This document shows, piece by piece, positions 13,931-64,000 of a stretch of DNA of 64,000 nt. The first letter of the stretch is position 1, and each line of letters begins with the position of its first letter. The translations under genes and the position numbers were made by a program. The notes under the pieces were generated by a model, which ran no database searches, was not told the origin of the DNA, and was given only the letters and a program-made list of their open reading frames with translations. This DNA is from Octopus sinensis (lineage: Eukaryota): NCBI RefSeq assembly GCF_006345805.1, contig NC_043006.1:42222001-42286000 (forward strand). The letters are read 5' to 3'.

Positions 13931-14060
13931 TATATATATATATATAACCACACAAATTTGAGCTCATTTTTTAAATATATTTTAACATTAACGTTTTTTT
14001 ATGTTATTTCTATTTTATTTATTTGTTTCTGTTTTTTTTTTTTGTTGAATTCTATTCTAG

Positions 14061-14317
14061 TGCTAACGAAGTGTTTGATGCCACATACCCGACAAACGTT
14101 CTGGTCTCTTACAATGGATTTTGTCACTGGGTACCTCCTGGTATGTTCAAAAGTACATGTCAGATTGACATCGCCTGGTTTCCCTTTGATGATCAGAAGT
14201 GTACACTCAAATTTGGTTCGTGGACCCACGATGGGCGTTACCTTGACCTTCAACTTGATGGAGACGGTAACGGAGATACGTCGAGTTTTATAAGAAATGG
14301 AGAATGGAAGTTAATAG
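14061..14317 (+). CDS. CHRNA7: Alpha7-like nicotinic acetylcholine receptor alpha subunit, internal exon (loop E, Cys-loop, loops B and F)
   Basis: Acceptor ttctag at 14055-14060 and donor G|gtgaga at 14318. Translates (S)ANEVFDATYPTNVLVSYNGFCHWVPPGMFKSTCQIDIAWFPFDDQKCTLKFGSWTHDGRYLDLQLDGDGNGDTSSFIRNGEWKLI, with a C-x13-C Cys-loop, FPFD and GSW. Colinear with vertebrate alpha7 exons 5+6. The symbol denotes family likeness, not proven orthology. Confidence 0.95.
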
Positions 14318-14791: not shown

Positions 14792-14850
<59 letters not shown>

Positions 14851-15946: not shown

Positions 15947-18900
15947 TGTTTCTTTATTAGCCACAAAGGGCTGCATACAGACGGGACAGATTACAAAGTA
16001 GAGCTTTTCTTTTTGGGGGAAAGAAAGAAAAAAAAGGTGGGTAGGTTTTCGATCAAAAGGGATCGTAAAAGGGAAAGAAGAAGGGAAAAAAAGAAAAGAA
16101 ACAAAAGAAAAAAACGATCAATAGGGATCGTGTATCACAGTGTTATGATGTACGGTGTAAAGGGGGAGGCATATAAGGTTTATCCGTGGGAAGAAAGCCT
16201 ACGTAAAAGACCACAGTAGCTTCGGTCAATATTGTTACATGTTACCACATTTGTTTGCAAGTAGGTAACTCTCTGTTTTCAATTTCTGGGTTCATAGGAT
16301 TATGCTCAAGGTGGCTTCGTCATTCATACGTGCCATCCTTGTTACATTCACCCATCTTTTTTTAAAACATTCGCTAGACAAAACTTGCCTCTCTTCTCTC
16401 ACTTTCCTTTTCAAGTGATACTTGAAGAAGTTGATGAGAGATTGACCAGAGAGGAAAGTGTTTGTCTCCAATCTTTTCAGACGCGTCCACCAGATACATT
16501 CTTTCGCCATAGCCAAAAGTATGATGAAAATAGCTCTTCCTTCCCGTTTAAAGGAAGGAGGCGTGACGACATTGACGATAGACTCGGCTGATAAACCGAC
16601 TCGTGACAGCAGACGTTCGACATCAGCCCACAGGTTGGAAATTGTTAGACACTGTACGAGTGCGTGCAGAACGGTTTCGTCGCTCTGACTGCATCTCAGG
16701 CAGGTCGGTCCCGTGTTTCTCGAGCCGTGTCTGTAGAGCTTATCCCGAACGGGTAGCGCTTCTCGATACCACTGCCAGGCCAGGGATCTCTGGAAGTTGT
16801 CCATTGGCCCTGGTCCGAAAGTCGTCCTGAACAGGCGGGTCAGGTATTCCTCGTCGACGTCCAGGTTCGCCCCGAGATCGTCGTCGTACCTCCCCTCCAC
16901 TAATCCCCTATAGAATTCTTGGGTTGTGTTGAAGTCACTCAAGGTCGACCCGGGACAGTATAGTTGCTTGAGAACAACGCAACACTCGCGGTGCCATTCG
17001 CCCTTTCTCGGCCTCTTTTTGATCCACGACTGCAGTTTGGTCATAGCGACGAGTTGCGGGAAAGCGTGCCTCACAAACGGTGACCACACCTGTTCACCGT
17101 CGTCTACGTAGAGCCTGAGGTGTCGCAGTCTCAGCGCGTGTCTGCGCATCATCAACCACGGCATGCCCAGTCCTCCTTTTAACGGGTGTTGACAGCAAAT
17201 GGATCGCCTGACCATCGGGACGCATCCTTTCCACAAGAAGCGAAAGAGAATGCGTTCTAGTTTGGTGATGGTAGGGTTGGGACAAGGCACGACGGTCAGG
17301 CGGTAGTAGATGACAGTCGCGATGTACGAGTTCGCCACCTCCGTCCGACCTTTTAGGGACAGTTTCCTCTCGGCCCATTGCCTGGCGAGAGTGACCACCC
17401 TACTCGTTATCTCGTTCCAGTTCTTCTCCATTTGGAGGTCCGGACCAAACCAGACCCCGAGCAACTCGGCCGGACCGTCGGTCCAGCGTCCCACGACGGA
17501 AGCGCTGCTGGACGGCATGGGTTTGCTTCTCCAGGTGCCGAGTCGCAAGCCCACTGATTTTTCCCGGTTGATTTTCGCTCCTGTCACCGCTTCGTAGTCT
17601 TTCAGTGTCTCGCCGACCTGCTCGATGTGTTCGTGGCTAGACACTATGACGGTGACGTCGTCCGCGTATGCAGACACGCTCGTCTCGCATCCCAATTCTC
17701 GCGGGATGCCCCTCAGAGTTGCCAGCTTCCGCAATAATGGCTCGAGAGTCAATACGTAGAGAAGCGACGAGAAGGGGCATCCCTGACGGACCGAACGTGT
17801 AATGTCGAAAGGTCTCAATAGATGTCCATTTACGCGAATGCCTCTGTACAAAGCGGCTATCCAGCCGCGGAAGACGGGACCGAAACCAGCCATTCTGAGG
17901 ACAACCTTCAAGTATCGATGGTCTACCCTATCGAAAGCTTTCGATTGATCCAAATTGATCAGCGCCCCACCCATGCCAGCTTCCTTAACTACCATGTCTA
18001 TGATGTAGTGCATCAGGTGGAGGTAGTCATGGATGCTCCGGCCCGGCACGTCGCACGTTCGCGCCTTGTCGACCAGTTTCTCGATGACAAGCGCTAACCT
18101 CTTGGGTAACACCTTGGCCAAAATTTTCAAGTCTGCATTAAGCAGAGTGATGGGCCTAAAGTTATCTATTACATTCCCCTTGTTTAGATCTTTCTTCAGC
18201 ATGGTTACGGCTCCTCGGCTCGCAAAACCAGGAATGCTCCCGTTTTGCTGCCAGTTGCAGTACACCGCTGCCAAGACGTCTCCAAACAAGTCTGGCATAC
18301 AACTGTAAAGCTCGTAGGGTAGACCATCCAAACCCAGCGATTTGTCCCTCAAACATTCTGCCATCGCGTCCTGCACTCCCGCCGCCGTGAAGGTACCTTC
18401 GCAGCGCCCCGCCTCTCTTGTCGAGAGTCGTGGCAGGCTGTGTAGGTAGGCACTGAAGTCCACCCTACGTTCTTGCCCGCCACTCGTCCCGAACAGTCGG
18501 GCAAAATGCTGTTGAAAGGCCTCACACACTTTACTTGGCTCGAGCAATTGGCGCCCCTGTTCATCTACCAGAGACCGAATGGTGGCTTTGTTGCCCTGTT
18601 GCGCCTCTGCCACCCGGGCCTCTCTCGCGGCTCCAACACCTTCGTTCCCTAGAGCACGCATCCTAGCTCTGACAACACACCCTTTGTGTTTGGCGTTGAA
18701 GTGTTGATCGAGGGCCAACCTCGCCGCCAAAACGTCGGATGCGATGCCGCTTCTAATTGCCTCTTCTAGCTTCTTAACTAGCTCAACCTCTACTCTATTT
18801 CTATCTATGGCTAGTGCTTTGCTGTACCTAATCGCTTCTGCTTTTATTGCTCTCTTGAGGGCAAACCACCATTTCTTGTTGATGATGGCTCCCGTCAAAG

Positions 18901-21489: not shown

Positions 21490-23175
21490 GACCATGTCTT
21501 ATCTATCTGTACCAGCAACTTCTCAATGGGAACAGTAGTATACCATATTAGTTAGCTCTGGCAGTGACAAAAATTGATCCCTAAATGCTGAACGCCCACA
21601 TGGCAAAAATCTACCGGCCAGTCACATGTCAGAACTTAATGTATAAGGTATATACAACATGCTTAAACCTCTTACTCTAAGACCATTGTGAAACCAGTAA
21701 TATCTTCACAGCAGAACAAACAGCTGGGAAGAAGGGAGTTTGGGGATGTACCGAACAGTTGTTAATCAACAAAACTGTGACGTCAGAGGTGCGAGAGCAT
21801 AGGAGGAACCTAGTTTCAATATGGCTAAACTACAAGAAAGCCTTTGATTCTGTTCCCCACTCATGGATTTTAGAAGCCTTTCAACTTGCTAAAGTTTCAA
21901 TGAGTATAGTCAAAGCCACAGCTCACCTGACTTCATCGTGGGCCACCATCTTGAACTCAAACACAAAGAGTAACTGTATTATTAATGATAGAATACGGTA
22001 TCGCAAAGGCATATTCCAAGGAGACAGTCTCTCTGTGATGTTGTTTATACTTTCTGTAAGCCCTTTGTCATTCATGTTAAGGAAGTCTGAAAGATATTTC
22101 ACTGGTTCACAAAGAAATAGAAATGCCAAAATTACACACAGTTTTTTTGTGGATGACTTGAAACTTTATGCAAAGAATATGCATGAGATGAAAAAGAGCC
22201 TTGACCTAGTTACAACATTCTCAAAGGATATAGGGTTGGAGTTTGGTCAGGATAAATGTTGTTATATAGTTGTGAAAAGGTTCCGATTTTGATGGGCATG
22301 CATTTGCAATCCAGGAACAGGAAATATCAACCAAATACCTGATGCACAAAAGGGATAGAGATGCAGGAAAAGCAGTAAAATGTAACAAACGATGCAGAAT
22401 TTGTGGTGTTAACACCGAAGATATCAGCCACATCATATGCAGTTAACCGAAAATGTTATCACGGTATATCTACTGATGAGACATGATGTAGCTAGGATAT
22501 GCTATAATTAAATCTGTCGGAAGGATAACCTCGAGGACAAAGAAATAAAAACCCACAGTATGGTAGAAGTCATTGCTACTCAAAATAAAAAGGAGTACTG
22601 GCGGAATGTCCCAGTGAAGACTTCAATAAAATGTAAGCACAACAGACCTGATATAAGGATTTGGGATAGAGAAGAGAAACTGTGTACAGTAGTGGTAATT
22701 AGCTGCCCAATAGATGTTAGCATAAAGCTGAAGATCAGTGAAAAAGAGAATACCTACGCTGAACTATTGAGAAATCTGCAGTTACTCTATCCAGATTACA
22801 ATTCCAGGTATATGCCTGCAATTATCGGGGCCCTGAGATATGTAACACTCTACCTAAATACTAATCTTTAGAAATTAGACTTCTCAAAAGCAGAATAGCG
22901 AAAGCTAATTCGAAAACTACAGATCCAGTCCATCACTAGAACTGTAAAAATCTGTAAACTTTTCCAGAAGTTTGTCATTTAAATATATATGAGCCTGTCT
23001 AGATATGCAACTATATATATGTGAATACATAAATAAAACAAAATATACAAATCTGTACACATACATACATATATATATACATACAAAAATACCCTGTTGT
23101 TGATGTTGAAATTCAATGGATCTAGGTTAAAAACCGGCTCTTTCTCCGTTGGTAAGAAATCTTGAAATATACACA
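21490..23175 (+). mobile_element. R4/Dong-like (REL endonuclease) non-LTR retrotransposon, 5'-truncated and degraded
   Basis: RT motifs WLNYKKAFDSVPHSW, GIFQGDSLS and FVDDLKLY (21759-22292). REL motif HNRPDI..ISCP..KE..Y (22560-22871). 3' UTR aaaaataccctgttgttgatgttgaaatt. Confidence 0.85.
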
Positions 23176-25695: not shown

Positions 25696-25816
25696 TTGGA
25701 TTAATGGGTACATGTTGAGTAGAGCACTGGCACGGTTTGGGCTAACTCGGCGGGCGTATAACAACATGACCACCTAAACTCAGGATCTTTAACAAGACAC
25801 AACTTTATGTATGGAT

Positions 25817-25920
25817 GTGCCTGATGAGGCTCAGACTACAAAATCGATGCAACACCACATGTTGAACGCAGTCCCGCCCATAAAGGACAGTGGCAGGATG
25901 GGTCGAAACGATCGTTGCAC
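25817..25920 (+). ncRNA. Type I hammerhead ribozyme with a 67-nt insertion in loop II
   Basis: Stem I gtgc/gcac; CTGATGA 25821-25827; stem II ggctc/gggtc; GAAAC 25905-25909; palindromic stem III AACGATCGTT; GTT triplet 25914-25916. Confidence 0.75.
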
Positions 25921-26560
25921 GCATTGAAGATTAATACCAAATCCATCATCTGATTACTTAATCAATTATCATTATATGAATATGCATGCACTGACGATTA
26001 AAAAGTGCATTTTGTGCACTAATTATGAAATCATATGATCTGCAGCTGAATCTGTTTTTAAAAGGCTCGCTTCGAAAGTTGCATTCCCTCGTGTTCGGTA
26101 CAATGTGTTTATTATGGTAGTTTTAACTTTAAGAGTCCCCCCTAGCGTGAGGCATTTATGGATAGTAATATACATACGACAATGAAGACTACACTTTGAA
26201 ATTTTCTTCATTATTGTAATGTTTATGCCATCTATATAGTAAGCAAAAATTTAAAATACAATGCTTCAAGGTATAAAACTGAACTTCAGTACACATGAGT
26301 ATGAGTGTCTTTACGCATGCGTCTGTCTATCTGCCTGTCTGTATGAATGCATACGTGTCTATGGTTGCATGTATGAATTCAGAAAAAGTTACTTAATTCA
26401 AAATACAGTTTATTCATTCGTTCCAGGCTAAACCCTCATTCACTTGGCTGCCAGTTTCCTGTTTCTTTTGCATGTTTTTCAAGCGTGCAAGAAATCGGAA
26501 ACTCGGCGTAGTTAGAAAGTAAAGATGTATACTCGATTGGTTGTTGTATATATATATATA

Positions 26561-32298: not shown

Positions 32299-32997
32299 TC
32301 TCACACATGATCATTGTCCATCTTCCTTTTCCTCACTTGATCATCTTTCTTTTCTTTCAGGGCTTTCCTAAAGACTGGACGTATCCTGTCTCTCTCTCTT
32401 CTATCTTTTCTCTTGACAAAGAAAATATTTCTCCATCGTTCGCTATTTTACCGTCGTTCTGGTCTAACGACCCTCGTTCGGCTTCCTTGTATGTCTCCAT
32501 TGTCTTGTTTTTGTTCCCAGATTTGACCCTCCACAATTCCCAAATTTTATTTTGGTACTTATGGAGCAACTGTCTTCGAAGACTCATATTGTCGTTCAAT
32601 GCTTGAAATGAGGAGTAGATAAACAGCCGACAACTGATGAAGGATCGTTCTTTATGTTACTTGTCCTGTTCCATTTGTTTCTCTCGTTGTTTGCGTATTG
32701 AACTCATTGGCTTTTGTATTTCATTTTTTGGTGTTGGTGGTGTCCTGTACCAATATATGCATATATATATATATAATATATATATACACACATACATACA
32801 TACATATACACACATATATATATATATACACACAAACACACACACACAAATATATGTGTGTGTGTGTGTGCGTATGTATATATACAGGAATACAGGAATC
32901 CCTCGCCATATCGTGAGTAGATACATTTGGTCTTTTTACACCTTATACTGTAAGAGAGAATCTTTTTTTATTCGCGGTAAATTGCACCACCGCCACC

Positions 32998-34603: not shown

Positions 34604-34798
34604 CTGTCCCCGGAAGGCGTAACGTTGTTAAATACGAATGTTGTCCACAAATTTACTTGGATGCAACTTATACAATTCATATTCGTCGTCGAACTCTATA
34701 TTATGGCTTCAACATCATCATACCGTGTGTGCTTATTTCTGCACTGTCTCTGTTATTATTTATCCTTCCACCGGATGCTGGAGAGAAAATATCATTAG
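34604..34798 (+). CDS. CHRNA7: Alpha7-like nAChR exon (loop C with vicinal cysteines, pre-M1, TM1, M1-M2 linker)
   Basis: Polypyrimidine tract plus cag at 34601-34603, donor G|gtaaga at 34799. The exon is 195 bp (same as vertebrate alpha7 exon 7, from memory) and phase-compatible with the 14317 donor. Translates (A)[64 protein letters not shown](G). YxCC marks an alpha subunit. Confidence 0.95.
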
Positions 34799-38925: not shown

Positions 38926-41345
38926 TATATTTCTTTATTTGCGACACAGGGCTGAACACAGAGGAGACAAATTACAAAGTAGAGCTTTTCTCTTGGGGGA
39001 GAAAATAAAAAGGTGGGTAGGCTTTCGATCAAAAGAGATCATTAAAAAAAAACGATCAATAGGGATCGTGTATCACAGAAATGTCATGATGTAAAGTGTA
39101 AAGGGGGAAACAGATAAGGTTTATCTGTGGAAAGAAAAGCCTACGGAAAAGACCACGGTAACCTCGGTCAATAATGTCACATGCTAACACATTTATTTGC
39201 AAGTAAGTAACTCTCAGTTTTAAATTTTTCCGGTTTCATAGGATCATGCTCAAGTAGCTTCGACATTCATACGTGCCATCCTTGCTACATTCACCCATCT
39301 TTTTTTCAAACATTCGCTTGACAAAACTTGCCTCTCTACTCTCACTTTCCTTTTCAAGTAATACTTGAAGTTGATGAGAGATTGACCAGAGAGGAAAGTG
39401 TTTGTCTCCAATCCTTTCAGACGCGTCCACCAGATACATTCTTTCGCCATAGCCACAAGTATGATGAAAATAGCTCTTCCTTCTCGTTTGAAGGAAGGAT
39501 GCGTGACGATATTGACGATAGACTCGGCTGATAAACCGACTCGTCCCACCCGTGACAGCAGTCGTTCGACATAAGCCCACAGGTCGGAAATAGTTGGACA
39601 CTGCACGAGTGCGTGCAAAGCTGTTTCGTCGCTCTGATCGCATCTCGGGTAGGTCGACCCCGTGTTTCTCGAGCCGTGTCTGTAGAGATTATCCCGAACG
39701 GGTAGCGCTTCTCGGTAGCACTGCCAGGTCAGGGATCTCTGGAAGTTGTCCATAGGTCCCGGCCCGAAAGTCGTCTTGAACAGGCGGGTCAGGTATTCCT
39801 CGTCAATGCCCAGGTTCGCCCCAAGATCGTCGTCGTACCTCTCCTCCACTAAGCCCCTGGACGGCATTGTTGCTTGAGAGCAACACGATACTCACGGTGT
39901 CATTCGTTCTTCCTCGGCCTCTTTTTGATCCTCGACTGCAGTTTGGTCATGGAGACGAGCGGCGGGAAAGCATGCTTCACAAACGGCGACCACACCTGTT
40001 CACCGTCGTCTACGTAGAGTCGGAATTGTTGCAGTCTCAGTGCGTGTCTGCGCATCGTCAACCACGGCATGCCCAGCCATCCTTTTAACTGGTGTTGACA
40101 GCAAATAGATCGCCTGACTATCGGGACGCATCCTTTCCACAAGAAGCGGAAGAGAATGCGTTCTAGTTTGGTGATGGTAGGCACCACGGTCAGGTGGTAG
40201 TAGATGACGGACGCGATGTACGTGTTCGACACCTCCGCTCGACCTTTTAGGGACAGTTTCCTCTTGGCCTATTGCCGGGCGAAGGTGACCACCCTACTCG
40301 TTATCTCGTTCCAGTTCTTCTCCATTTGGAGGTCCGGACCAAACCAGATTCCGAGCAACTCGTCCGGACCATCAATCCAGCGTCCCACGACGGAAGCTCT
40401 GGTGGACAGCATGGGCTTGCTTCTCCGGGTGCCGAGCCACAAGCCCACTGACTTTTCCCTGTTGACTTTCGCTCCTGTTACCGCTTCGCGGTCTTTCAGT
40501 ATCTCACCGACCAGCTCGATGTGCTCGTGGCTAGACATTATGACGGTGACGTCGTCTGCGTATGCAGACACGCCCATCAGAGTCGCCAGCTTCCACAGTA
40601 GTGGCTCGAGAGTCAATACGTATAGAAGCGACGAGAGGGGGCATCCCTGACGGACAGAACCTGCAATGTTGAAAGGTCTCGATAGATGTCCATTTACGCG
40701 AATTACCGAACGGATGCCTCTGTACGAAGCAGCTATCTTGACTCCAAACAAGTCTGGCATGCAACTGTAAAGCTCGTAGGATAGACCATCCAAACCCAGC
40801 GATTTGTCCCTCGAGCATTCTGACATCGCGTCCCGCACTTCCGCTGCCGTGATGGCATCTTCACGGCCTCTCTTGTCGAGCATCGTGGCAGGCTGTGTAG
40901 GTAGGCACTGAAGTCTACCCTGCGTTCTCGCCCGCCACTCGTCCCGAACTGTCGGGCAAAATGCTGTTGAAATGCCTCACACATTTTACTTGGCTCGAAT
41001 AATTCATGCCCCTGTTCATCTACCAGAGACCGAACGGTGGCTTTGTTGCCCTGTTGCGCCTCCACCACCCGGGCCTCTCGTGCGGCTCCAACACCTTCGT
41101 TCCTTTGAGCACGCATCCTAGCTCTGACAACACACCCTTTGTGTTTGGCGTTGAAGTGTTGCTTGAGGGCCAACCTCACTGCCAAAACGTCGGATACGAT
41201 GCCACTTCTAATTGCCTCTTCTAACTTCTTAACTAACTCACCCTCTACTCTGTTTCTATCTATGGCTAGTGCTTTGCTATACCTAATCGCTTCTGCTTTT
41301 ATTGCTCTCTTGAGGGCAAACCACCATTTGTTGTTGATGATGGCT
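38926..41345 (-). mobile_element. Second Tx1-like LINE copy, frameshifted and internally deleted
   Basis: ORF fragments 39250-39867, 39900-40232, 40269-40883, 40733-41185 are highly similar to 16292-18898. It has the same 3' UTR ending in (TATC)n at 38809-38925 and lacks the RT segment between DLFG and IAA.Y seen in copy 1. Confidence 0.9.
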
Positions 41346-46922: not shown

Positions 46923-47179
46923 CCTAAATCAATACCCTCTATTAATTCAGGAGTTCTCTGAGTACTCAGAAGTGTATAAAAAAAGTCACTCATTATATTA
47001 ACAGAAAGTTACGGTCCGCGTACATATGCCGCAAGCTAAATGATACCAACAATATTGCTAGAAAGGTAGACTCTTCTGGATTTGTGACAGACACATCAAC
47101 TCCCATATAGAAGGATACGCCTTCGCTATTCAGGATTATGAGATAGCTTTTAGATCCCTCATCAGTAGGAATGTCTGTG

Positions 47180-47557
47180 TGATAAGTAGCTTGCTTACCA
47201 ACCACATGGTTCCGGGTTCAGTCCCACTGCATAGCACCTTGGGCAAGTGTCTTCTTCTATAGCCTCGGGCCGACCAAAGCCTTGTTAGTAGATTTGACAA
47301 ACGGAAGCTGAAAGAAACCCGTTGTATATATGTATATGTGTGCGTGTTTGTGTGTGTGTGTGTTTGTCCCCCCAACATCGCTTGACAACCGATGCTGGTG
47401 TGTTTATGTCCCCGTAACTTAGCAATTCGGCAAAAGAGGCCGATAGAATAAGTACTAGGCTTACAAAGAATAAGTCCTGGGGTCGATTTGCACGACTAAG
47501 GCGATGCTCCAGCATGGCCACAGTCAAATGACTGAAACAAGTAAAAGAGTAAAAAGA
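47180..47557 (+). mobile_element. SINE family B copy
   Basis: Full head-to-tail match with the other copies. Confidence 0.8.
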
Positions 47558-49853: not shown

Positions 49854-50077
49854 TTCTATATTTAAGAGATGTAGAATTATGTACATTATTTATATTATTT
49901 ACATTATTTACATCCAACGGATATTTGTCCTCACCTTGTTTGTTGTTAACAACGTTTCGAAATTTTCCCAAGACACCTGAAGAAGGCTGGAGGATATATC
50001 AGCCGAAACGTTGTGTTAACAACAAACAAGATGAGGACAAATATCCATCGAATGTAAATAATATAAATAATGTAAAT
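49854..50077 (+). mobile_element. Penelope-like pseudo-LTR mini-insertion (inverted plus direct terminus) with hammerhead motif and 13-bp TSD
   Basis: TSD aagaaggagtacg at 49841-49853 and 50078-50090. Internal inverted arms ~49880-49959 / 50004-50077. Hammerhead motif at 49972-50017. PLE assignment is inferred from this architecture. Confidence 0.75.
49972..50017 (+). ncRNA. Minimal (dimer-type) hammerhead ribozyme motif
   Basis: gacac-CTGAAGA-a-ggctg(10 nt)cagcc-GAAAC-GTT-gtgtt. Stem III reduces to the palindrome AACGTT, as described for minimal PLE hammerheads. Confidence 0.7.
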
Positions 50078-50556
50078 AAGAAGGAGTACGGTTGGGTATT
50101 TATATTTTAATCGTTACAATTGTTTCCACGCAACGTAGGTCTCCAGGCGTGCAGGTACTTGATTATTCAACTGTTTTCTGCATTATGAGATTTGGTTGTG
50201 TTTCCTCAGTGGATATGTAAATATTGTCTTCGTGAGTTCAAAATCCTCGGCTTCAAGAACATCCTCTGTGTCTAACATGGCCTGAACATAGTAGTAGTCA
50301 CTGAACTCAGTGGATACTAAATTCAGGCCACGATAGACAGAGACGTCCTTGAAGCCGAGGATTTTAAACTTACGAAGGGAATATTTACATATGCTATGTG
50401 TGAAACACAACCAGATCTCATAGTGCAAGGAAGCAATTGCATAACCAAGGACCTGCACGCCTGGAGAACTACGTTGCGTGGAAACAATTGTAATGATTAA
50501 AAATAAATACCCAACCGTGCTCCTTTTTGTTGACTCCATTTCTTTTCAATTATAGA

Positions 50557-50875: not shown

Positions 50876-51225
50876 GCAGGCGTGGCTGTGTGGTAAGAAG
50901 TTTGCTACTTCCCAACCATATGGTTCTGGACTCAGCCCCACTGCGTGGCACCTTGGGCAAGTGTCTTTTACTATAGCCTCAAGCCGATCAAAGCCTTGTG
51001 AGTACATTTGGTAGTCAGAAACTGAAAGAAGCTCGTCGTATACATATGTGCGTGTTTGTCCACCCACCATCGCTTGACGACCGATGTTGGTGTGTTTATG
51101 TCCCCGTAACTTAGAGGTTCGATAAAAGACACCGATAGAATAAGCACTGGGGTCGATTTGTTCGACTAAAGGCACTGCTCCAGCATGGCAGCAGTCGGAT
51201 GACTGAAATAAGTAAAAGAGTAAAA
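50876..51225 (+). mobile_element. SINE family B copy
   Basis: gcaggcgtggctgtgtggtaagaag head and gactgaaataagtaaaagag tail. Confidence 0.8.
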
Positions 51226-53854: not shown

Positions 53855-54830
53855 AGGCTCTGTAGTAAGAAATTGGCTTTCCAACCACACGGTCTCGGGT
53901 TCAGTACCACAACGTAGCACCTTGGGTAGGTATCTTCTACTAGAGCACTGGGCGAACCAAAGTTATGTGGGTCGATTTGGGAGACAGAAGCTGAAGGAAA
54001 AGATGCCTGTCGTGTATATATTTACCGCACGCTCTTTGTGTGTGTGTGTGTGTGTGTGTGTGTTTCCCGCTTAGCAACTTGCGTTCATCTGTCTGCACCC
54101 CCGTAACCTAGCGGTTCGGAAAAAGGTACCTGTAAAATAAGTACCACCATTTAAAATAAAAAAAGATGCACTGGGGTCGATTTGTTCCGCTAAACCCTTG
54201 AAAGCAATACCCCAGCATGGCCACAGTACAATAATTGAAACAATTATAAAGGGAAGCTAAAAAATATATATTCTTTTATTTAATTGCCTGTTTCAGTGAT
54301 TTGACTGCGGCCATGCTGGAGCACCGACTTTAGTCGAACAAATCGACCCCCAAGACTTATCCTTTGTAAGCTTTGTACTCATTCTATCGGTCTCTCTTGC
54401 TGAACCGTTAAGTTACAGGGACGCAAACACACCAACATCGGTTGTCAAGCAATGGTGGGGGACAAACAGGGAAACACAAACATATACATATCTGTTTGTT
54501 TACATAGGACGTAACCTATACGACATCTAGCGTTTCTGGATAACTCTATAACTTATAAATTAGCAGAAGAATTTACCTGTCAGGCAGTTTAGCTTAAATG
54601 ATAGAGCATTCCAACCGGATATTAGAGGGGTATGAGTTCGTTCCTCCTACTTGTTCTATATATATATACGACGGGCTTCTTCAGTTTCGGTCTACCAAAT
54701 CCACTCACAAGGCTTTGGTCGGCATAGGGCTATAGTAGAAGACACTTGCCCTAGGTGCCACGCAGTGGGACTGAACCCGGAACAATGGGGTTGAAAAGCA
54801 AGCTTCTTACCACACAGCCACTCCTGCAGC
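53855..54830. mobile_element. Adjacent inverted pair of SINE family B copies (+ 53855-54250, - 54280-54830)
   Basis: Tail-to-tail orientation about 30 bp apart. Confidence 0.7.
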
Positions 54831-55794: not shown

Positions 55795-55990
55795 GGGACA
55801 AGAACGCAAACGATTCGGACAGTTAGGTGATACAAAAATGGGACAACAAAACATCCAAATAGACGATACAAAGAAAACAAGGACGGGTCAGTCGAAGTTT
55901 TCTTTCCTTAGTCAAGTACCAGATTATCTTCGCAGTTTCGGCTGATTATACTTGAGATTGTTCCAATCTGGCCAGCCCCAAGGAAAAACT
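55795..55990 (-). repeat. Possible further Penelope-like terminal repeat (degenerate)
   Basis: Follows a (TA)n tract. Minus strand ctaagga-aagaaaacttc-gact resembles a decayed hammerhead core. Weak. Confidence 0.3.
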
Positions 55991-55994
55991 GATG

Positions 55995-56078
55995 TAAATG
56001 TAATTAATCTACGAAATTAAATGTAAATTAATCTACGAAATTAAATGTAAATTAATCTACGAAATTAAATGTAAATTA
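55995..56078. repeat. 24-bp tandem repeat (aaatgtaaattaatctacgaaatt), about 3.5 copies
   Basis: Directly visible. Confidence 0.85.
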
Positions 56079-56345
56079 GATGTAAATTGCGTAAGGAGAG
56101 TAAAAATGTATATGAAAAAAAATGTATAAAATATAAGGTAAAAATGTAAATATAAAAAATGTCTTGGTGTAAATATAGATTTTATGAATTTTTGCATTCC
56201 CGACATTTCTTATATTTATACCCTTATATATGCACCTATGTACTGTGACCCTTAAACAGAAATATTTTACTCTCACCAGATGGAGTACTCTGTTGAATTA
56301 TATGACGAAACAATGCATATATGTGTGTGTATGTGTGTGTGTGTA

Positions 56346-56377
<32 letters not shown>

Positions 56378-56384
56378 GAGGACA

Positions 56385-56712
56385 CCCGCTTCGGTCTTGA
56401 AGGACCATGGGATTGTACCTAGAAAGTTACCCTCCCAGGCACAAGTCCGGGCAAGGTTGTTTGTGGAAGGCCAGCAGTCGCCCATGCATACCAGCCTCCC
56501 CTCTCCACGCCATTGATGTTATCCAAGGGAAAGGCAAAGGGCGATACAGCTTGGCACCAGTGACGTCGCAACTCATTTCTACAGCTGGGTGAACTGGAGC
56601 AACGTGAAATAAAATGTTTGCTCAAGAGCACAACACGCAGCCCGGTCAGGGAATCGATCTCACAACCTCACGATCGTAAGCTCGATGCTCTAACCACTGA
56701 GCCATGCGCCTT
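56385..56712 (-). mobile_element. tRNA-derived SINE (head ggcgcatggctcagtggttagagc)
   Basis: A/B box-like head at 56650-56712. Related pieces at 2935-3075, 11735-11925 and 30890-31180. Confidence 0.65.
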
Positions 56713-57437
56713 CACACACACATGCGCACACGTATATATGTGTATATATATGTGTAAGGGTCGTAAATCACTTCCAGGCTTCAGCGGGGGAAGTTGAAAT
56801 TTGATATTATTGTGATGAGTGGTCACTCTACATCTATCCATCGCTACAGGTTTATAGCTTTATGTTTATAGAGTGTATGTGCGTGCATATACACACACAT
56901 ACATATAATACATACATACATACATACATACATACATGCATACACAGGCGTATGTACGTACATGCATACATACATACATACACACATGTATGCATACATA
57001 CACACAAACATACGGACATATATATGACGAACTAACTGTTACTTTCTCAGATCAGCACGGATTTTTGTCAGTGAACAGGTCGCGGATTTTAGCGACGAAA
57101 ATATTTTGACAAATTAAACTTAAATGTTGAAGTGAATCGAACGGCTTTTGTGTGTTTCTTAAATGGCTTATAAACACCTTCCACGCTGCAATTGTTTTCG
57201 TTTCAGCACACGATCTCAGATCAAATTACTTGCTATGCGAGTACATCTCCGTAATATATATATATATATACTCTTCTACCTTCACAGTGCTTTATTTTAC
57301 TGGAAAGTAATACATTTGTATTGCAATATTTTATTATTCATTGAAAATCTTTTCGTTGTTACCGGTCTGTTAACGGCTATACGTTCAGGCAAGTATACTG
57401 GCATTGATGTAGCAACATTTGAAATATTGTCCAGGTA

Positions 57438-57513
57438 AATCCAGCTGATGAAGACTAATCAAATTTACGATGATAAAACGTATTTGAAGAGTCCGAAACC
57501 TAGGTACTGGATT
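57438..57513 (+). ncRNA. Type I hammerhead ribozyme
   Basis: Stem I aatccag/ctggatt; core CTGATGA 57445-57451; stem II gact..agtc extended by tcaaa/tttga and tacg/cgta; GAAAC 57495-57499; palindromic stem III ACCTAGGT; GTA triplet 57504-57506. Confidence 0.85.
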
Positions 57514-57820
57514 ATCCGATTATGGGTTATATAATGTGTAAGGCAAAAATTTTTATGTTTGCTGCCTTCACACAACTTAACCAGTATATACACACTGAAG
57601 CTTTACTATAGCGTAGTAAATGTATCGACTGATATTTCCAGTAAACATTGGTGCTTTGTTGTACCACTACTCTTTTGTTGGTTTAAAGTTATAGTAGAAG
57701 ATTCTTGCCCAACGTACCTGAACTCGGAACTATGTGGTAAGGAAACAAACTTCTTACCACACAGGCAGATTGCTAGACAGCAAATGTATGCATAAATATA
57801 TGTGTTTTTGTGGATGCGTG

Positions 57821-58042
57821 TAGAAGAGGATGCTGAAAAGTTCCTGGTTTTGGGTAAAAGAAATTATAGGAGGCTCAGTTAATTATGATTTTATTCAACA
57901 TATTCCTATCTCAGGTTTACACACTTATTGCAGCTGTCCTTCAGTTTTTTCTAAGCTCCATAAAAGAACTCGGAAGATTGAGCCTCCATCCAGCCCTTTC
58001 GCGATACTCTTAAAACCAGGAGCTTTTTAGCGTCTCTTCGTA
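57821..58042. mobile_element. Mariner-derived MITE, same family as 10481-10683
   Basis: TIRs agaggatgctgaaaagttcctgg / ccaggagctttttagcgtctcttcgta and shared internal sequence ttaattatgattttattcaaca. Confidence 0.75.
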
Positions 58043-58046
58043 TGTA

Positions 58047-58498
58047 CATACGATCTCTTTACTACCCACAAGGGGCTAAACACAGAGGGGGACAAACAAG
58101 GACAAACAAACTGGTACTTAATTTATCGAAGGCGGAGAGCTGGCAGAATCGTTAGCACGCCAGGCGAAATGCTTAACGGTATTTCGCTTGTCGTTACGTT
58201 GTGAGCTCAAATTCCGCCGAGGTCGACTTTGCCTTCCATCCTTTCGGGGTCGATAAATTAAGTACCAGTTACGCACTGGGGTCGATGTAATCGACTTAAT
58301 ACCTATGTCTGTCCTTGTTTGTCCCCTCTATGTTTAGCCACTTGTGGGTAATAAAGAAATAGGTACTTAATTTATCGACATCGAAAGAATGAAAGGCAAA
58401 GTCGACCTCGGCGGAATTTGAACTCAGAACGTAACCGCAGACGAAATACCACTAAGCATTTCGCCCGGCGTGCTAACGTTTCTACCAGCTCGCCGCCT
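58047..58498. mobile_element. Nested SINE family A: + copy inserted in a - copy
   Basis: Outer TSD tcttcgtatgta (58035-58046, 58499-58510). Inner TSD ggtacttaatttatcga (58113-58129, 58362-58378). Confidence 0.85.
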
Positions 58499-60013
58499 TC
58501 TTCGTATGTATAAACGTATTCATGTATGTATGTACGTGTGTAAGTAGGTCGGTATTAGATTTATCTGCGTGGATTTTGTGTGGTATCGTTGTTGGCGAAG
58601 TGTTATTGCGGTTGGATGTGAATGATTCGCTAAATCACCAATCAGTGAAGTGTCTGCATAATTCATGCGTTGTTTTATGGATAATTTCCCTGTTTGTTTC
58701 AAGTGATTTCCTAATTTAGCATTGTATGTGCATGGGAAATACCATTTTACCATTCCATTGATCAACCACATTAAGACCTGTATTCATGTATACACGCATA
58801 TATACATTTATATGTGAGTGTGTGTCTGTATCTGTGTGTGCATGCAAACACACATACATACATACATACATACATACATACATACATACATACATACATA
58901 CATACATACATACATACACATACATACATACATAAACACACACACACATACATACATATTTGGTAATCAGGCAAAATCGTTAAGCACGTCAGACAAAACG
59001 CTTAGCGCCATTTCTTTCGGCTACAAACGTTCTGAGATCAAATCCTGCCGAGGTCCAGGTTACTTTTCATTCCTTCAGTTCCTGTGAGTACTAGGGTCGA
59101 TGAAATCGACTTGTACCTTCCATTCAAAATTGCTGGCCTTAGACCCTGCCGCGGACCTGTGTCCCATTCAAGATTAACCGGCTTTATGAGTCCAAGGGCT
59201 CAACACACACACTAACACATACACCCACACAAAAACACACATACACACGCACATACACGCACGCATATGGATGGATGTCAGTTATCTCGAAGCTAACCTT
59301 ACTATGAATGAATAGTTTCTAAATGTAATAATATATCGGATCAAACCCCACTCGACCGCATGGGAAGAAGGCTAGGGGCTAACCGCATTACACAAACCAG
59401 ACGTTATGTCGTTCAAGTTCTAAGGGTAGCTTTTAGCCATTTTATCTAAGGTGCGTGCTATTAACTCGGTTGATATCTTAAACTATTGTTTTGTAGGTCT
59501 GTCCGCTTCGAGACACACATTAAATGATTTAAACTTTTTCTTTTTCTGCGCTTTAAAACATGTGTTTTATATGTAAATATATATAATATATATATACATA
59601 TATTATATATATTATATATATATATATATATTATATATATATATATATATATATTGTATGTATGTATGCATACATGTATATATGTGTGTATGTATGTATG
59701 TATACATATACATACTTATATACATACATATGACATATGTATGACTGGATTTGATGAATGGGTGGATTTTGTATCTATGTGTGTATCTATGTATATATAT
59801 ATACATATATATATTTTATATACATAAATATATATATAAATAAATATATATATATATATATATCTATATAGATATATATATATATATATATAATATATAT
59901 ATATATATATACGCTTACATATATACATACTGGTATCAGGATCAGGATTCATAAATCTATATACGTAGATAGATAAATAGAAATAGTTTAGATAGATATA
60001 GATAAATTAAAAC

Positions 60014-60091
<78 letters not shown>

Positions 60092-60139
60092 TGTGTATGT
60101 ATATGTATATATATATATGTCTGTGTATGTGTGTGCGTG

Positions 60140-60177
<38 letters not shown>

Positions 60178-60270
60178 CACACAAATATACCTTTATATCT
60201 ACCCGCAAATATATATATGTATTTGGGTGTTTATGTGTGTATATGTATTTGTTATAGTTTTGAAGAATTC

Positions 60271-60697
60271 TATCGAGGAGTTAATAAACGACCAACTTAG
60301 GGAAATACAAATGAATGCTATGTCGTCTCACAGAATTTTTAAAAAAACTCAAGGCGAATACATTAAAATAAGTTAAATATATTAAATAATGCATTCATGA
60401 TATTTATTTATTTGGATATTATTTGCTTTGTATGTTACAGACTACATCATTTAATAACTGTTTTATGACACACAAACTTGTGTATGTATGCCGTTGTGTA
60501 TGTCCCTGAGTATGAAGGTAATGCATGAGTGTATGTGTGTGTGTGTGTGTATTAGAGGAAAACAGAGAACTAGAAGACAGTTCTGTGTATATCAGCAAAT
60601 ATGTTTATACATAAATATACGCATAGATGTGTGTGTATGTGTGTATCTATATATATTTGCATGTTCTGTATATATGTGTGTGTATGCATATATATAT

Positions 60698-60734
<37 letters not shown>

Positions 60735-60735
60735 G

Positions 60736-60781
<46 letters not shown>

Positions 60782-61147
60782 GTATATATGTATGTATGTA
60801 TATATATATATATATATATATATAATCAAATTAGTATTATATATATCATACTATATTATTAGAATAGCTAAAATATTTAAATGTATATGTGGCGCGTGTG
60901 CTAGTGTATTTATGCGTGTGTATGAGTGTATGTGTATTCATATACATATGCATATATACATACCTATACGCACCTATATATGCACTATAGTTATATATGC
61001 ATAAATGCATATATATTTGCACACACATACATTCATACATATATGCTTATGTACAGCATACTTTGAGAGAAACTAAGATTTTTCACATATAAATATTCCT
61101 ATGCATAGCACAAATATACATACATACAAATATATATGCGTACATTC

Positions 61148-61178
<31 letters not shown>

Positions 61179-61817
61179 CGCACACATACATACAAATATA
61201 CAGGCAATTCATACATACGTATATACAGACATACATACGTACGTACGTACACACATACGTACGCAGATATATGCACATGTGTATGGAAATCTCGTACTAC
61301 TCTCTATATGGGCTGTGACCACTTATAAGATGGAGCTAAACCACCGAAATCAATATATAAGAGAAAAGCTAGGCTTTAACCAAAACAGACGATCGATCCT
61401 TCCTTCCCCCCACCCCTCGCTCTTTCTCTCTTTCTTTCTTTCTTTCTCGCTCTCACTCTCGCTCGCTCGCTCTTTCTCTCGTCATCCACCCTCCACCCAA
61501 CGCCATCAACTTACAGAAGGAAAAAAATCGATTGTTTCAGCCAAACATTCATTTCAGAAGTTAGAATATTCTAGAAGAGGAAACAGCCTGAAGGTTGATA
61601 ATAATAAATAGATGCCGTGTAACAACTAGCGAAGTGATGTGATCTATGGTAGGAAGAGGAAGAGGCGGGGGGGAAACAGAGGACAGTGTAGAGATTGTGT
61701 TTGAGGTAGAGAGAGTCAGTGAATGAAGTGGGAGATGGGGAAAGGGATAGAAAGAGGAAGGGATAAAAAAAATATCTGCAGAACTCTTGCTCGGCAGATT
61801 TGGAGAAGAAAAGTATT

Positions 61818-61859
<42 letters not shown>

Positions 61860-62756
61860 GATACAAAAGGAGGAGGAGGAAGAGGAGAACAAAAGAGAGA
61901 GAGGGGTGAAAGAGAGTAAGAAATAGATATATAGAGAGACAGGTAGAGATAACAACTGACAGGATATTGAGGAGAGAGAGAGAGAACAAAGAATGAAATT
62001 ATCTGGAGAGGAGAGAAGTTCAGTGAGGAAGAAGAAGAAGAAGAAGAAGAAGAAGAAGAAGAAGAAGAAGAAGAAGAAGAAGAAGAAGAAGAAGAAAAGT
62101 GAAAAGAATGAATGGTAGAAGGAGAGTTAGGAATAGAGAGAGATTATGAAGAGTGAGGGGAATAGAATTTCGGAGTTAGAGATAGCGTGGTCCGAGAGAG
62201 AAAGTGGGGAAAGACAGGATGAAAGACTNNNNNNNNNNNNNNNNNNNNNNNNNNNNNNNNNNNNNNNNNNNNNNNNNNNNNNNNNNNNNNNNNNNNNNNN
62301 NNNNNNNNNNNNNNNNNNNNNNNNNNNNTATCGAGGAGTTAATAAACGACCACACTTAGGGAAATACAAATGAAGCTATGTCGTCTCACAGAATTTTTAA
62401 AAAAACTCAAGGCGAATACATTAAAATAAGTTAAATATATTAAATAATGCATTCATGATATTTATTTATTTGGATATATATTTGCTTTGTATTGTTACAG
62501 ACTACATCATTTAATAACTGTTTTATGACACACAAACGTGTGTATGTATGCGTGTGTATGTCCCTGAGTATGAAGGTATGCATGAGTGTATGTGTGTGTG
62601 TGTGTGTATTAGAGGAAAACAGAGAACTAGAAGACAGTTCTGTGTATATCAGCAAATATGTTTATACATAAATATACGCATAGATGTGTGTGTATGTGTG
62701 TGTATCTATATATATTTGCATGTTCTGTATATATGTGTGTGTATGCATATATATAT

Positions 62757-62793
<37 letters not shown>

Positions 62794-62794
62794 G

Positions 62795-62840
<46 letters not shown>

Positions 62841-63895
62841 GTATATATGTATGTATGTATATATATATATATATATATATATAATCAAATTAGTATTATA
62901 TATATCATACTATATTATTAGAATAGCTAAAATATTTAAATGTATATGTGGCGCGTGTGCTAGTGTATTTATGCGTGTGTATGAGTGTATGTGTATTCAT
63001 ATACATATGCATATATACATAACCTATACGCACCTATATATGCACTAGTTATATATGCATAAATGCATATATATTTGCACACACATACATTCATACATAT
63101 ATGCTTATGTACAGCATACTTTGAGAGAAACTAAGATTTTTCACATATAAATATTCCTATGCATAGCACAAATATACATACATACAAATATATATGCGTA
63201 CATTCGTGCATATATATATATATAATATATATATATAAATATATATATATACGCACACATACATACAAATATACAGGCAATTCATACATACGTATATACA
63301 GACATACATACGTACGTACGTACACACATACGTACGCAGATATATGCACATGTGTATGGAAATCTCGTACTACTCTCTATATGGGCTGTGACCACTTATA
63401 AGATGGAGCTAAACCACCGAAATCAATATATAAGAGAAAAGCTAGGCTTTAACCAAAACAGACGATCGATCCTTCCTTCCCCCCACCCCTCGCTCTTTCT
63501 CTCTTTCTTTCTTTCTTTCTCGCTCTCACTCTCGCTCGCTCGCTCTTTCTCTCGTCATCCACCCTCCACCCAACGCCATCAACTTACAGAAGGAAAAAAA
63601 ATCGATTGTTTCAGCCAAACATTCATTTCAGAAGTTAGAATATTCTAGAAGAGGAAACAGCCTGAAGGTTGATAATAATAAATAGATGCCGTGTAACAAC
63701 TAGCGAAGTGATGTGATTCTATGGTAGGAAGAGGAAGAGGCGGGGGGGGGGGAACAGAGGACAGTGTAGAGATTGTGTTTGAGGTAGAGAGAGTCAGTGA
63801 ATGAAGTGGGAGATGGGGAAAGGGATAGAAAGAGGAAGGGCTAAAAAAAATAACTGCAGAACTCTTGCTCGGCAGATTTGGAGAAGAAAAGTATT

Positions 63896-63927
<32 letters not shown>

Positions 63928-64000
63928 CAGAGAGAAATGATACAAAAGGAGGAGGAGGAAGAGGAGAACAAAGAGAGAGAGGGGTGAAAGAGAGTAAGAA
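60271..64000. repeat. Near-identical direct duplication across the gap (from 60271 and from 62329)
   Basis: Both start tatcgaggagttaataaacgacc. Differences are mostly 1-2 bp indels in homopolymers and microsatellites. Confidence 0.9.
62229..62328. other. 100-N assembly gap
   Basis: Run of N. Confidence 0.99.

What the first reader, a model, noticed from the sequence alone, without database searches (positions are those of the whole stretch)
57438..57513. Fully canonical hammerhead ribozyme, sense to the nAChR pre-mRNA
Every element of a type I hammerhead is present: 7-bp stem I (aatccag/ctggatt), CUGAUGA, an extended stem II, GAAAC, stem III around the palindrome ACCUAGGU and a GUA triplet predicting cleavage after 57506. 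The only oddity is an A/C pair at the base of stem II. No TM2-TM4 exon was found after 34798, so this probably lies in a very long intron of the receptor, on the transcribed strand (inference). It could cut the nascent transcript, as reported for intronic ribozymes in vertebrates such as the RECK hammerhead and the CPEB3 HDV-like ribozyme.
Basis: partly seen in the sequence, partly recalled or inferred. Interest (0 to 1): 0.8.

Follow-up and report, generated by a model that had tools for sequence, protein, structure and literature searches.

The report
Retroelement-type hammerhead ribozyme motif in intron
The sequence really is a hammerhead ribozyme motif and not a chance match, but it is one of at least three in this window and has the shape typical of mobile-element hammerheads that cut best as pairs, so it is more likely a stranded retroelement relic than a switch controlling the acetylcholine-receptor gene.

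Summary
The motif is not a chance match. A descriptor taken from the literature finds two hits in the window. A first-order Markov (dinucleotide) background model predicts about 7e-5 hits per window. All 719 decoy descriptors with permuted cores find nothing. A related descriptor finds a third motif, a Penelope-type minimal hammerhead.

All three lie on the + strand, in introns or presumed introns of an alpha7-like nAChR gene. That gene's two visible exons have clean AG/GT boundaries.

The motif is not "fully canonical" as a stand-alone ribozyme:
- Helix III is only 2 bp capped by the palindromic tetraloop CUAG.
- Position 10.1/11.1 is an A·C mismatch.
- Rfam scores it 23.6 bits (Hammerhead_HH9) against a curated threshold of 52.

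Two copies co-fold into the classic double hammerhead, but no second copy, tandem repeat or Penelope-like ORF lies nearby.

The best reading is a solitary hammerhead derived from a retroelement (retrozyme or Penelope-like class), probably weak or inert as a monomer. Regulated cleavage of the nAChR pre-mRNA is possible but has no support here. I could not obtain any comparative or expression data. I file it as a new member of a known kind, of modest interest.

The parts
57438..57444 (+). HHR-A helix I, 5' strand (AAUCCAG)
   Evidence: Pairs with 57507-57513 (7 bp).. Kept in the MFE and centroid folds of both the 76-nt and the 388-nt context.
57445..57451 (+). HHR-A core C3-A9 (CUGAUGA)
   Evidence: Exact consensus.
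57452..57494 (+). HHR-A helix II: A·C mismatch at 10.1/11.1, then 4 bp, an internal loop, and an extension of 5 + 4 bp with a 9-nt loop
   Evidence: The hairpin is predicted in the MFE and the centroid.
57495..57498 (+). HHR-A core G12 A13 A14 A15.1 (GAAA)
57498..57505 (+). HHR-A helix III, palindrome ACCUAGGU. Monomer: 2 bp plus tetraloop CUAG. Dimer: 8-bp intermolecular helix.
   Evidence: Homodimer co-fold is -43.2 kcal/mol against 2 x -14.7 for two monomers, and it forms the double hammerhead.
57506..57506 (+). HHR-A position 17 (A of GUA). Predicted cleavage between 57506 and 57507.
   Evidence: Follows from the hammerhead numbering rule. Not tested experimentally.
57507..57513 (+). HHR-A helix I, 3' strand (CUGGAUU)
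25816..25921 (+). HHR-B, a second hammerhead motif with the same architecture. Helix I UGUGC/GCACG; CUGAUGA 25821-27; helix II GGCUCA/UGGGUC enclosing a 65-nt insert; GAAA 25905-08; helix III palindrome ACGAUCGU 25908-15; U17 at 25916.
   Evidence: Rfam Hammerhead_1 gives 15.8 bits against a threshold of 34. The hammerhead-compatible fold is 10 kcal/mol above the MFE, so it is probably decayed.
49972..50017 (+). HHR-C, a Penelope-type minimal hammerhead. Helix I GACAC/GUGUU; CUGAAGA 49977-83; unpaired A49984; helix II GGCUGG/UCAGCC; GAAA 50005-08; C-G; U16.1; U17 at 50012.
   Evidence: The MFE is exactly the hammerhead fold. Decoy rate is 0.0014 per descriptor. It sits at the centre of the inverted repeat 49886-49951 / 50014-50079.
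14060..14317 (+). nAChR alpha7-like exon (Cys-loop part of the ligand-binding domain), with AG acceptor and GT donor
   Evidence: tblastn E = 5e-29, sequence read, homologues.
34604..34798 (+). nAChR alpha7-like exon (C-loop YECC, TM1, start of TM2), with AG acceptor and GT donor. It is the last exon seen in the window.

Best explanation
HHR-A is a genuine type I hammerhead motif of the kind carried by metazoan retroelements, either non-LTR retrozymes or Penelope-like elements. It was left as a solitary copy in a long intron of an alpha7-like nAChR gene, on the transcribed strand.

In its parent element such a motif works in multimeric or tandem transcripts. Two copies pair through the palindromic helix III (ACCUAGGU) to form a stable double hammerhead. 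Each active site then cleaves after position 17 by in-line attack of the 2'-OH, leaving a 2',3'-cyclic phosphate and a 5'-OH. This releases unit-length RNA for circularisation or retrotransposition.

As a lone copy here it has only a 2-bp helix III, an A·C mismatch at 10.1/11.1, and no recognisable loop-loop contacts. It is therefore expected to cleave slowly or not at all in the pre-mRNA, and to have no host function.

Shown: the motif itself, its statistical non-randomness, the dimer-competent fold, its solitary status in the window, sibling motifs in the same gene, and strand and exon context.

Inferred: retroelement origin, low monomer activity, and absence of host function.
For: - The motif and all core nucleotides are present.
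- It is non-random: about 7e-5 expected per window under the first-order Markov background model, 0 of 719 decoy descriptors hit while the true core hits twice, and none of 35 metagenome core matches has the stems.
- Helix III of 2 bp plus a palindromic tetraloop is the published signature of invertebrate retrozyme hammerheads and of Penelope-element variants (PMC7229834, PMC4209133).
- A U·U mismatch at the base of helix II has a precedent in real axolotl retrozyme hammerheads (PMC7229834).
- The hammerhead fold is within 0.8 kcal/mol of the MFE as a monomer. The homodimer gains 13.8 kcal/mol and forms the double hammerhead.
- Two further hammerhead motifs lie in the same window. One is a textbook Penelope-type minimal hammerhead with the unpaired nucleotide 5' of helix II, sitting inside an inverted repeat.
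- Solitary, highly heterogeneous copies are what the literature reports for these elements (PMC4209133).
- Local GC is about 33%, matching the low-GC context of retrozymes.
- HHR-A and HHR-B each lie within 200 nt downstream of a (TA)n array, against a background of 13% of positions. Some Penelope-like clades target (TA)n (PMC8557442).
- Cephalopod genomes are known to hold Penelope elements and hundreds of Rfam Hammerhead_1 loci (PMC6962438).
Against: - No parent element was identified. No second copy of 57300-57660 exists in the window.
- There is no long-period tandem repeat.
- There are no RT or GIY-YIG remnants on the + strand in the frames scanned, 55900-57440 upstream and 57514-59000 downstream of HHR-A.
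- There is no detectable flank similarity to HHR-B, and a BLAST of the HHR-A region against the whole window found no match anywhere, HHR-C included.
- The long, 43-nt helix II domain is atypical for published retrozyme or Penelope hammerheads.
- Mussel retrozyme hammerheads, placed by the source paper among invertebrate hammerheads with a more stable helix III than the amphibian ones, do self-cleave as single motifs at about 0.1 per min (PMC7229834). Low monomer activity is therefore an inference, not a result.
- I could not measure genome-wide copy number or cross-species presence or absence.
Confidence: 0.66

Rival explanations
1. Exapted or otherwise active intronic ribozyme. HHR-A folds as a monomer in the nascent nAChR pre-mRNA and cleaves it co-transcriptionally. 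This lowers or modulates production of full-length receptor mRNA, as proposed for the amniote RECK hammerhead.
For: - It is on the sense strand, 22.6 kb into a presumed intron of at least 29 kb. A slow ribozyme would therefore have minutes to act before the intron is completed.
- The core is intact.
- The hammerhead fold is nearly the MFE and persists in a 388-nt context fold.
- Mussel retrozyme hammerheads, which lack most of the conserved loop-loop tertiary contacts, cleave as single motifs at about 0.1 per min (PMC7229834).
- Domestication of retroelement hammerheads into introns has a precedent (PMC6155905).
Against: - There is no evidence of conservation or expression, and it could not be obtained.
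- The A·C mismatch at the highly conserved 10.1-11.1 pair, the 2-bp helix III and the lack of recognisable tertiary-contact loops all argue for low activity.
- Rfam HH9 scores 23.6 bits against a threshold of 52.
- It is one of three heterogeneous motifs in the same gene, and one of them is clearly decayed. That is what random insertions look like, not a dedicated regulator.
Confidence: 0.08
2. Member of a still-active retrozyme or Penelope-like family whose partner copy is hidden. The true locus holds tandem or nearby copies that were collapsed or lost in assembly, or that lie beyond the window. HHR-A would then still process element transcripts or circular RNAs.
For: - The motif is dimer-competent with an intact core.
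- The assembly is imperfect nearby: a 100-N gap lies at 62229-62328, flanked by a 1.6-kb duplication at 97.8% identity.
- Retrozyme tandem arrays are known to be hard to assemble, and Penelope insertions cause problems in assemblies (PMC8557442).
- The published search rule accepts partner motifs up to 50 kb apart (PMC4209133).
Against: - No partial second unit or terminal redundancy flanks HHR-A.
- The flanks run without interruption into a microsatellite and SINE-like repeats.
- The other two motifs have different helix III palindromes (GAUC, or none), so they cannot pair with HHR-A.
Confidence: 0.15
3. Chance resemblance. An AT-rich, repeat-rich genome throws up a hammerhead-like string with no ribozyme ancestry.
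For: - Rfam finds nothing at curated thresholds.
- The 388-nt context is no more structured than 5 of 27 control windows.
- A genome of this apparent size and repeat content would still contain a few chance hits to looser descriptors. The loose scan expects 0.25 per window.
Against: - The first-order Markov background model expects about 7e-5 per window for the literature-defined descriptor, yet two are seen.
- 0 of 719 composition-matched decoy cores hit the real sequence.
- 0 of 35 real core matches from metagenomes have the stems.
- A third, independent minimal hammerhead lies in the same window.
Confidence: 0.02

Closest known systems
Type I hammerheads of metazoan non-LTR retrozymes (coral, mussel, axolotl; Cervera & de la Pena 2020, PMC7229834)
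   Same: - Type I topology with an intact core.
- Helix III of 2 bp capped by a palindromic tetraloop.
- AT-rich surroundings.
- Ability to form a double hammerhead.
- A mismatch at the base of helix II has a precedent (axolotl HHR_Amex2).
   Different: - Retrozymes are tandem repeats of about 170-400 bp with one hammerhead per unit. HHR-A is a single copy with no repeat unit.
- Its helix II carries a 33-nt extension instead of a small loop 2.
- No circular RNA evidence is available.
Minimal and variant hammerheads of Penelope-like elements (Cervera & de la Pena 2014, PMC4209133)
   Same: - Small palindromic helix III and a longer-than-usual helix II.
- Predicted to act as a dimer, with low activity expected as a monomer.
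- Mostly found as solitary, highly variable copies thought to come from truncated elements.
- A clear Penelope-type minimal hammerhead (HHR-C) lies 7.4 kb upstream in the same presumed intron.
   Different: - No RT/GIY-YIG ORF or pseudo-LTR was found next to HHR-A.
- HHR-A lacks the unpaired nucleotide between A9 and G10.1.
- It lacks the conserved G10.1-C11.1 pair.
- Its helix I is longer (7 bp against 4-5 bp).
Amniote intronic hammerheads HH9 (RECK) and HH10, Rfam RF02275 and RF02277 (reviewed in PMC6155905)
   Same: - Type I hammerhead on the sense strand of an intron of a protein-coding gene.
- Best, though sub-threshold, Rfam match is HH9.
- Both are thought to descend from retroelement hammerheads.
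   Different: - HH9 is defined by near-total conservation across birds and mammals and by conserved loop 1-loop 2 contacts.
- Here the score is 23.6 bits against 52, three outer helix pairs are non-canonical in the alignment, and conservation is unknown.
Newt/salamander satellite 2 and Schistosoma Sm-alpha hammerheads
   Same: Weak helix III with a palindromic loop, and activity that depends on dimers in multimeric transcripts.
   Different: Those sit in abundant tandem satellite or SINE-like repeats with conserved tertiary loops. HHR-A is solitary and its flanks are unique within the window.

Membership tests
Hammerhead ribozyme (general definition) | Conserved core: C3 U4 G5 A6 N7 G8 A9, G12 A13 A14, the A15.1-U16.1 pair, and H17 (not G) | tested here: met
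   CUGAUGA 57445-51, GAAA 57495-98, A57498-U57505, A57506.
Hammerhead ribozyme (general definition) | Three helices (I, II, III) radiating from the core | tested here: inconclusive
   Helix I has 7 bp. Helix II has 4 bp plus 9 more, beyond an A·C at 10.1/11.1. Helix III has only 2 bp plus a tetraloop as a monomer, but 8 bp in the dimer.
Hammerhead ribozyme (general definition) | Site-specific self-cleavage giving 2',3'-cyclic phosphate and 5'-OH ends | not testable with these tools
   This needs in vitro transcription or end-specific RNA sequencing.
Rfam Hammerhead clan CL00010 (Hammerhead_1, HH9, HH10, II, 3) | Covariance-model score at or above the curated gathering threshold | tested here: not met
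   No gathering-level hit in the window. HH9 scores 23.6 bits against 52. HHR-B scores 15.8 bits on Hammerhead_1 against 34.
Amniote-type domesticated intronic hammerhead (HH9/HH10-like) | Conservation at the orthologous intron position across distant species | not testable with these tools
   No orthologous DNA could be fetched. Exact look-ups and two protein-word searches on the flanking ORFs found nothing.
Amniote-type domesticated intronic hammerhead (HH9/HH10-like) | Sense orientation within an intron of a host gene | tested here: met
   It is on the same strand as the exons at 14060-14317 and 34604-34798, and no later exon occurs in the window. The intron is inferred because the next exon lies outside the window.
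Metazoan non-LTR retrozyme | Tandem repeats of about 170-400 bp, each carrying a type I hammerhead | tested here: not met
   No second copy and no long-period tandem repeat.
Metazoan non-LTR retrozyme | Type I hammerhead with a short helix III capped by a small palindromic loop, in a low-GC (<45%) context | tested here: met
   for the helix. GC is 0.33-0.35 across 57200-57700.
Penelope-like element hammerhead | Location in the flanking repeats of an RT plus GIY-YIG ORF | tested here: not met
   Pfam finds no RT or GIY-YIG domains in the three + strand frames of 55900-57440 and 57514-59000. The literature notes that most copies are solitary (PMC4209133).
Penelope-like element hammerhead | Palindromic 15.2-16.2 and loop 3; an unpaired nucleotide between 9 and 10.1; a G10.1-C11.1 pair; helix II longer than 4 bp | tested here: inconclusive
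   In HHR-A the palindrome and the long helix II are met, but the unpaired nucleotide and G10.1-C11.1 are not. All four are met in the neighbouring HHR-C.

The most novel reading that the evidence does not exclude
HHR-A (perhaps together with HHR-B and HHR-C) is a domesticated, sense-strand intronic ribozyme conserved among octopods. It would cleave the alpha7-like nAChR pre-mRNA co-transcriptionally and so tune receptor isoform or dosage in the nervous system. That would be an invertebrate counterpart of the RECK hammerhead, with an unusually long helix II domain possibly acting as a regulatory platform.
Probability: 0.04. Interest if true: 0.7.

Novelty: new member of a known kind. Interest (0 to 1): 0.3.

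Why it matters
If the best reading holds, the locus adds one more example to the well-documented spread of retroelement hammerheads through animal genomes.

Two points go slightly beyond that. First, a cephalopod-like genome appears to carry such motifs at high local density, three in 64 kb. All three score below Rfam's thresholds, so standard annotation would miss them. Second, all three lie in sense orientation inside one neuronal receptor gene. That gene would be a convenient natural test case for asking whether stranded hammerheads ever affect host transcripts.

Only if the motif proved conserved and active would it matter more, as a rare invertebrate example of ribozyme domestication.

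Tried and rejected
- **Rfam at gathering thresholds.** No hit. A whole-window E-value scan was swamped by sub-threshold miRNA matches driven by microsatellites and was not informative.
- **Second copy or tandem unit.** Window self-BLAST, the repeat finder and TRF all found none.
- **Penelope RT/GIY-YIG remnants.** Pfam on the three + strand frames of 55900-57440 and 57514-59000 found none. The only RTs in the window are LINE-type and lie elsewhere.
- **Flank homology between HHR-A and HHR-B.** Not above shuffled controls. The shared AGACU...AGUCC ends of the inner helix II hairpin remain unexplained and carry little weight.
- **Retrozyme-like compact folding of the 388-nt context.** The z-score is -3.6, but 5 of 27 control windows are about as low (z of -3.2 or below). 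I rejected this as evidence.
- **Orthologous DNA.** Exact look-ups of two flanking ORFs failed. Protein-word searches with the 91-aa flanking ORF and with a composite of seven ORFs around the motif also found nothing. A related species' contig exists for the Cys-loop exon (L036, 84.8% identity), but nothing was retrievable for the hammerhead region.
- **Metagenome pattern scan.** It returned 35 core-only chance matches, useful only as a negative control.
- **Other hammerhead-like strings.** The candidate at 25991 and the GAAACAAUUGUA sites at 50126 (-) and 50481 (+) lack helices I and II, so I rejected them.

Full report
**Observation.** The sequence at 57438-57513 (+) reads AAUCCAG-CUGAUGA-[A GACU AA UCAAA UU UACG AUGAUAAAA CGUA UUUGA AG AGUC C]-GAAA-C CUAG G U-A-CUGGAUU.
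- a 7-bp helix I;
- the CUGAUGA and GAAA core boxes;
- an extended helix II whose first pair is an A·C mismatch (A57452/C57494);
- the palindrome ACCUAGGU;
- a GUA triplet placing cleavage after 57506.

**Is it more than chance?** Rfam at curated thresholds finds nothing in the window. With permissive settings the best match is Hammerhead_HH9, at 23.6 bits against a threshold of 52. On that evidence alone the motif would be doubtful.

I therefore wrote a descriptor from the published definition of invertebrate type I hammerheads:
- CUGANGA;
- helix II of at least 4 bp, tolerating one mismatch at its base;
- GAAA;
- helix III as A..U enclosing one more pair and a palindromic tetraloop;
- H17;
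- helix I of at least 5 bp.

Three controls followed.
- In 1,800 Mb of sequence simulated from a first-order Markov (dinucleotide) model of the window, the descriptor hit once. That is about 7e-5 per window.
- In the real window it hits twice, both on the + strand. Of 720 descriptors whose core letters are permuted but whose composition is identical, only the true hammerhead core hits anything.
- A scan of the metagenome collection for CUGAUGA...GAAACCUAGGUA gave 35 exact core matches. None has helices I and II.

So the stems are not a by-product of the core strings, and chance is effectively excluded.

**Sibling motifs.** The second hit, HHR-B (25816-25921), has the same architecture:
- helix I of 5 bp;
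- G10.1-C11.1 and a 6-bp helix II closing a 65-nt insert;
- helix III palindrome ACGAUCGU;
- U17 at 25916.

Its hammerhead-compatible fold lies 10 kcal/mol above its MFE, and Hammerhead_1 gives only 15.8 bits. It looks decayed.

Allowing helix III to shrink to the 4-nt palindrome ACGU found a third motif, HHR-C (49972-50017, +). It has CUGAAGA, an unpaired A before a 6-bp helix II, GAAACGUU, and a 5-bp helix I. Its MFE is exactly the hammerhead fold. [quoted passage not shown] It sits at the centre of an inverted repeat, 49886-49951 / 50014-50079. Inverted, truncated copies are typical of Penelope insertions (PMC8557442).

**Gene context.** tblastn with alpha7-type sequences and with database homologues finds two exons on the + strand:
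- 14060-14317, the Cys-loop region;
- 34604-34798, covering the YECC C-loop, TM1 and the start of TM2.

Both have AG acceptors and GT donors. No TM2-TM4 exon is detectable in the remaining 29 kb. HHR-B therefore lies in the 20-kb intron between the two exons. HHR-C and HHR-A lie in the following presumed intron. All are in sense orientation.

**Anatomy and likely mechanism.** As a monomer, HHR-A's full hammerhead fold, with core nucleotides unpaired, is -13.9 kcal/mol against an MFE of -14.7. Helices I and II persist in a 388-nt context fold. Helix III, however, is only A-U and C-G closed by CUAG.

Two copies co-fold at -43.2 kcal/mol, against -29.4 for two monomers. The result is the classic double hammerhead with an 8-bp intermolecular helix III. 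That is the design described for satellite, retrozyme and Penelope hammerheads, which work in multimeric transcripts (PMC4209133, PMC7229834).

Here there is no partner:
- no second copy of 57300-57660 in the window;
- no long-period tandem repeat;
- the other two motifs carry different palindromes.

The A·C at 10.1/11.1 replaces a highly conserved G-C pair, and no loop 1-loop 2 contact motif can be recognised. I infer weak or no cleavage as a lone intronic copy.

This remains an inference. Mussel retrozyme hammerheads cleave as single motifs at about 0.1 per min even though they lack most of the conserved loop-loop contacts, and the source paper describes invertebrate hammerheads in general as having a more stable helix III than the amphibian ones (PMC7229834). 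An axolotl hammerhead with a U·U at the base of helix II still cleaves.

**Origin.** I could not identify the parent element.
- The 630-bp stretch 57025-57660 is unique in the window. It is bounded by an (ACAT)n array upstream and SINE-like repeats downstream.
- Pfam finds no RT or GIY-YIG remnants on the + strand in 55900-57440 and 57514-59000.

Weak supporting details:
- local GC is about 33%;
- both HHR-A and HHR-B begin within 200 nt downstream of a (TA)n array, which holds for 13% of positions, and some Penelope-like clades target (TA)n (PMC8557442).

Cephalopod genomes are reported to carry Penelope elements and hundreds of Hammerhead_1 loci (PMC6962438). Three heterogeneous, solitary hammerheads in 64 kb match the published picture of massive, widespread and highly variable retroelement hammerheads in metazoan genomes.

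**What could not be done.** No orthologous or transcript data could be reached. Exact-protein look-ups and two word-index searches on ORFs around the motif all returned nothing. A related species' genomic contig does exist for the Cys-loop exon, at 84.8% identity. Conservation, copy number and in vivo cleavage therefore remain open.

**Verdict.** This is a real hammerhead motif on the transcribed strand of an nAChR intron. It is best explained as a stranded retroelement hammerhead of the dimer-dependent class, not as a dedicated regulator comparable to the RECK or CPEB3 ribozymes. It is a new member of a known kind, of modest interest (0.3). I put about 4% on the more interesting reading, that it is a conserved and active intronic ribozyme.

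Noticed in passing
window 49972-50017 (+), inside inverted repeat 49886-49951 / 50014-50079: A textbook Penelope-type minimal hammerhead (HHR-C): CUGAAGA, an unpaired A, a 6-bp helix II, GAAACGUU, and a 5-bp helix I. Its MFE equals the hammerhead fold. Further nested inverted repeats extend to 50546.
   Followed up: partly
window 25816-25921 (+): A second hammerhead motif (HHR-B) with the same 2-bp plus palindromic-tetraloop helix III (ACGAUCGU) and a 65-nt insert in helix II. The hammerhead fold is 10 kcal/mol above the MFE, so it is probably decayed. Its inner hairpin starts and ends with the same AGACU...AGUCC as helix II of HHR-A.
   Followed up: partly
window 57533-57574: An 11-bp hairpin (UGUGUAAGGCA / UGCCUUCACACA) lies 20 nt downstream of HHR-A. 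It gives a sub-threshold match to mir-7398 (24.7 bits against 44).
   Followed up: no
window 60300-61922 and 62359-64000, with gap 62229-62328: A 1.6-kb segment is duplicated at 97.8% identity on either side of a 100-N assembly gap. This is either a recent tandem duplication or an assembly artefact.
   Followed up: partly
window 16292-18898 (-), 39250-41185 (-), 21759-22292 (+): An intact 868-aa LINE-type ORF (RVT_1 plus zf-RVT), a decayed copy of the same family, and a separate RT fragment all lie inside the nAChR introns.
   Followed up: partly
window 14060-14317 and 34604-34798 (+); locus L036: Two exons of an alpha7-like nAChR subunit (vicinal Cys YECC) are separated by a 20-kb intron. A Logan contig (SRR11869391) from a related species matches 13978-14803 at 84.8% nucleotide identity, and the exon product at 99%.
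   Followed up: partly
whole window, e.g. 60122-60190, 32814-32886, 59658-59728: Dozens of sub-threshold matches to mir-297, mir-466, mir-3149 and mir-1277 fall on (TA)n, (TG)n and (ACAT)n microsatellites. They are low-complexity artefacts, not miRNA genes.
   Followed up: no
window 57665-57767, 54706-54820, 50883-51006, 47172-47261, 3802-3877, 8072-8121: A SINE-like repeat family (...CTTCTTACCACACAGCC...) is scattered through the window in both orientations. One fragment lies 150 nt downstream of HHR-A but does not include it.
   Followed up: partly
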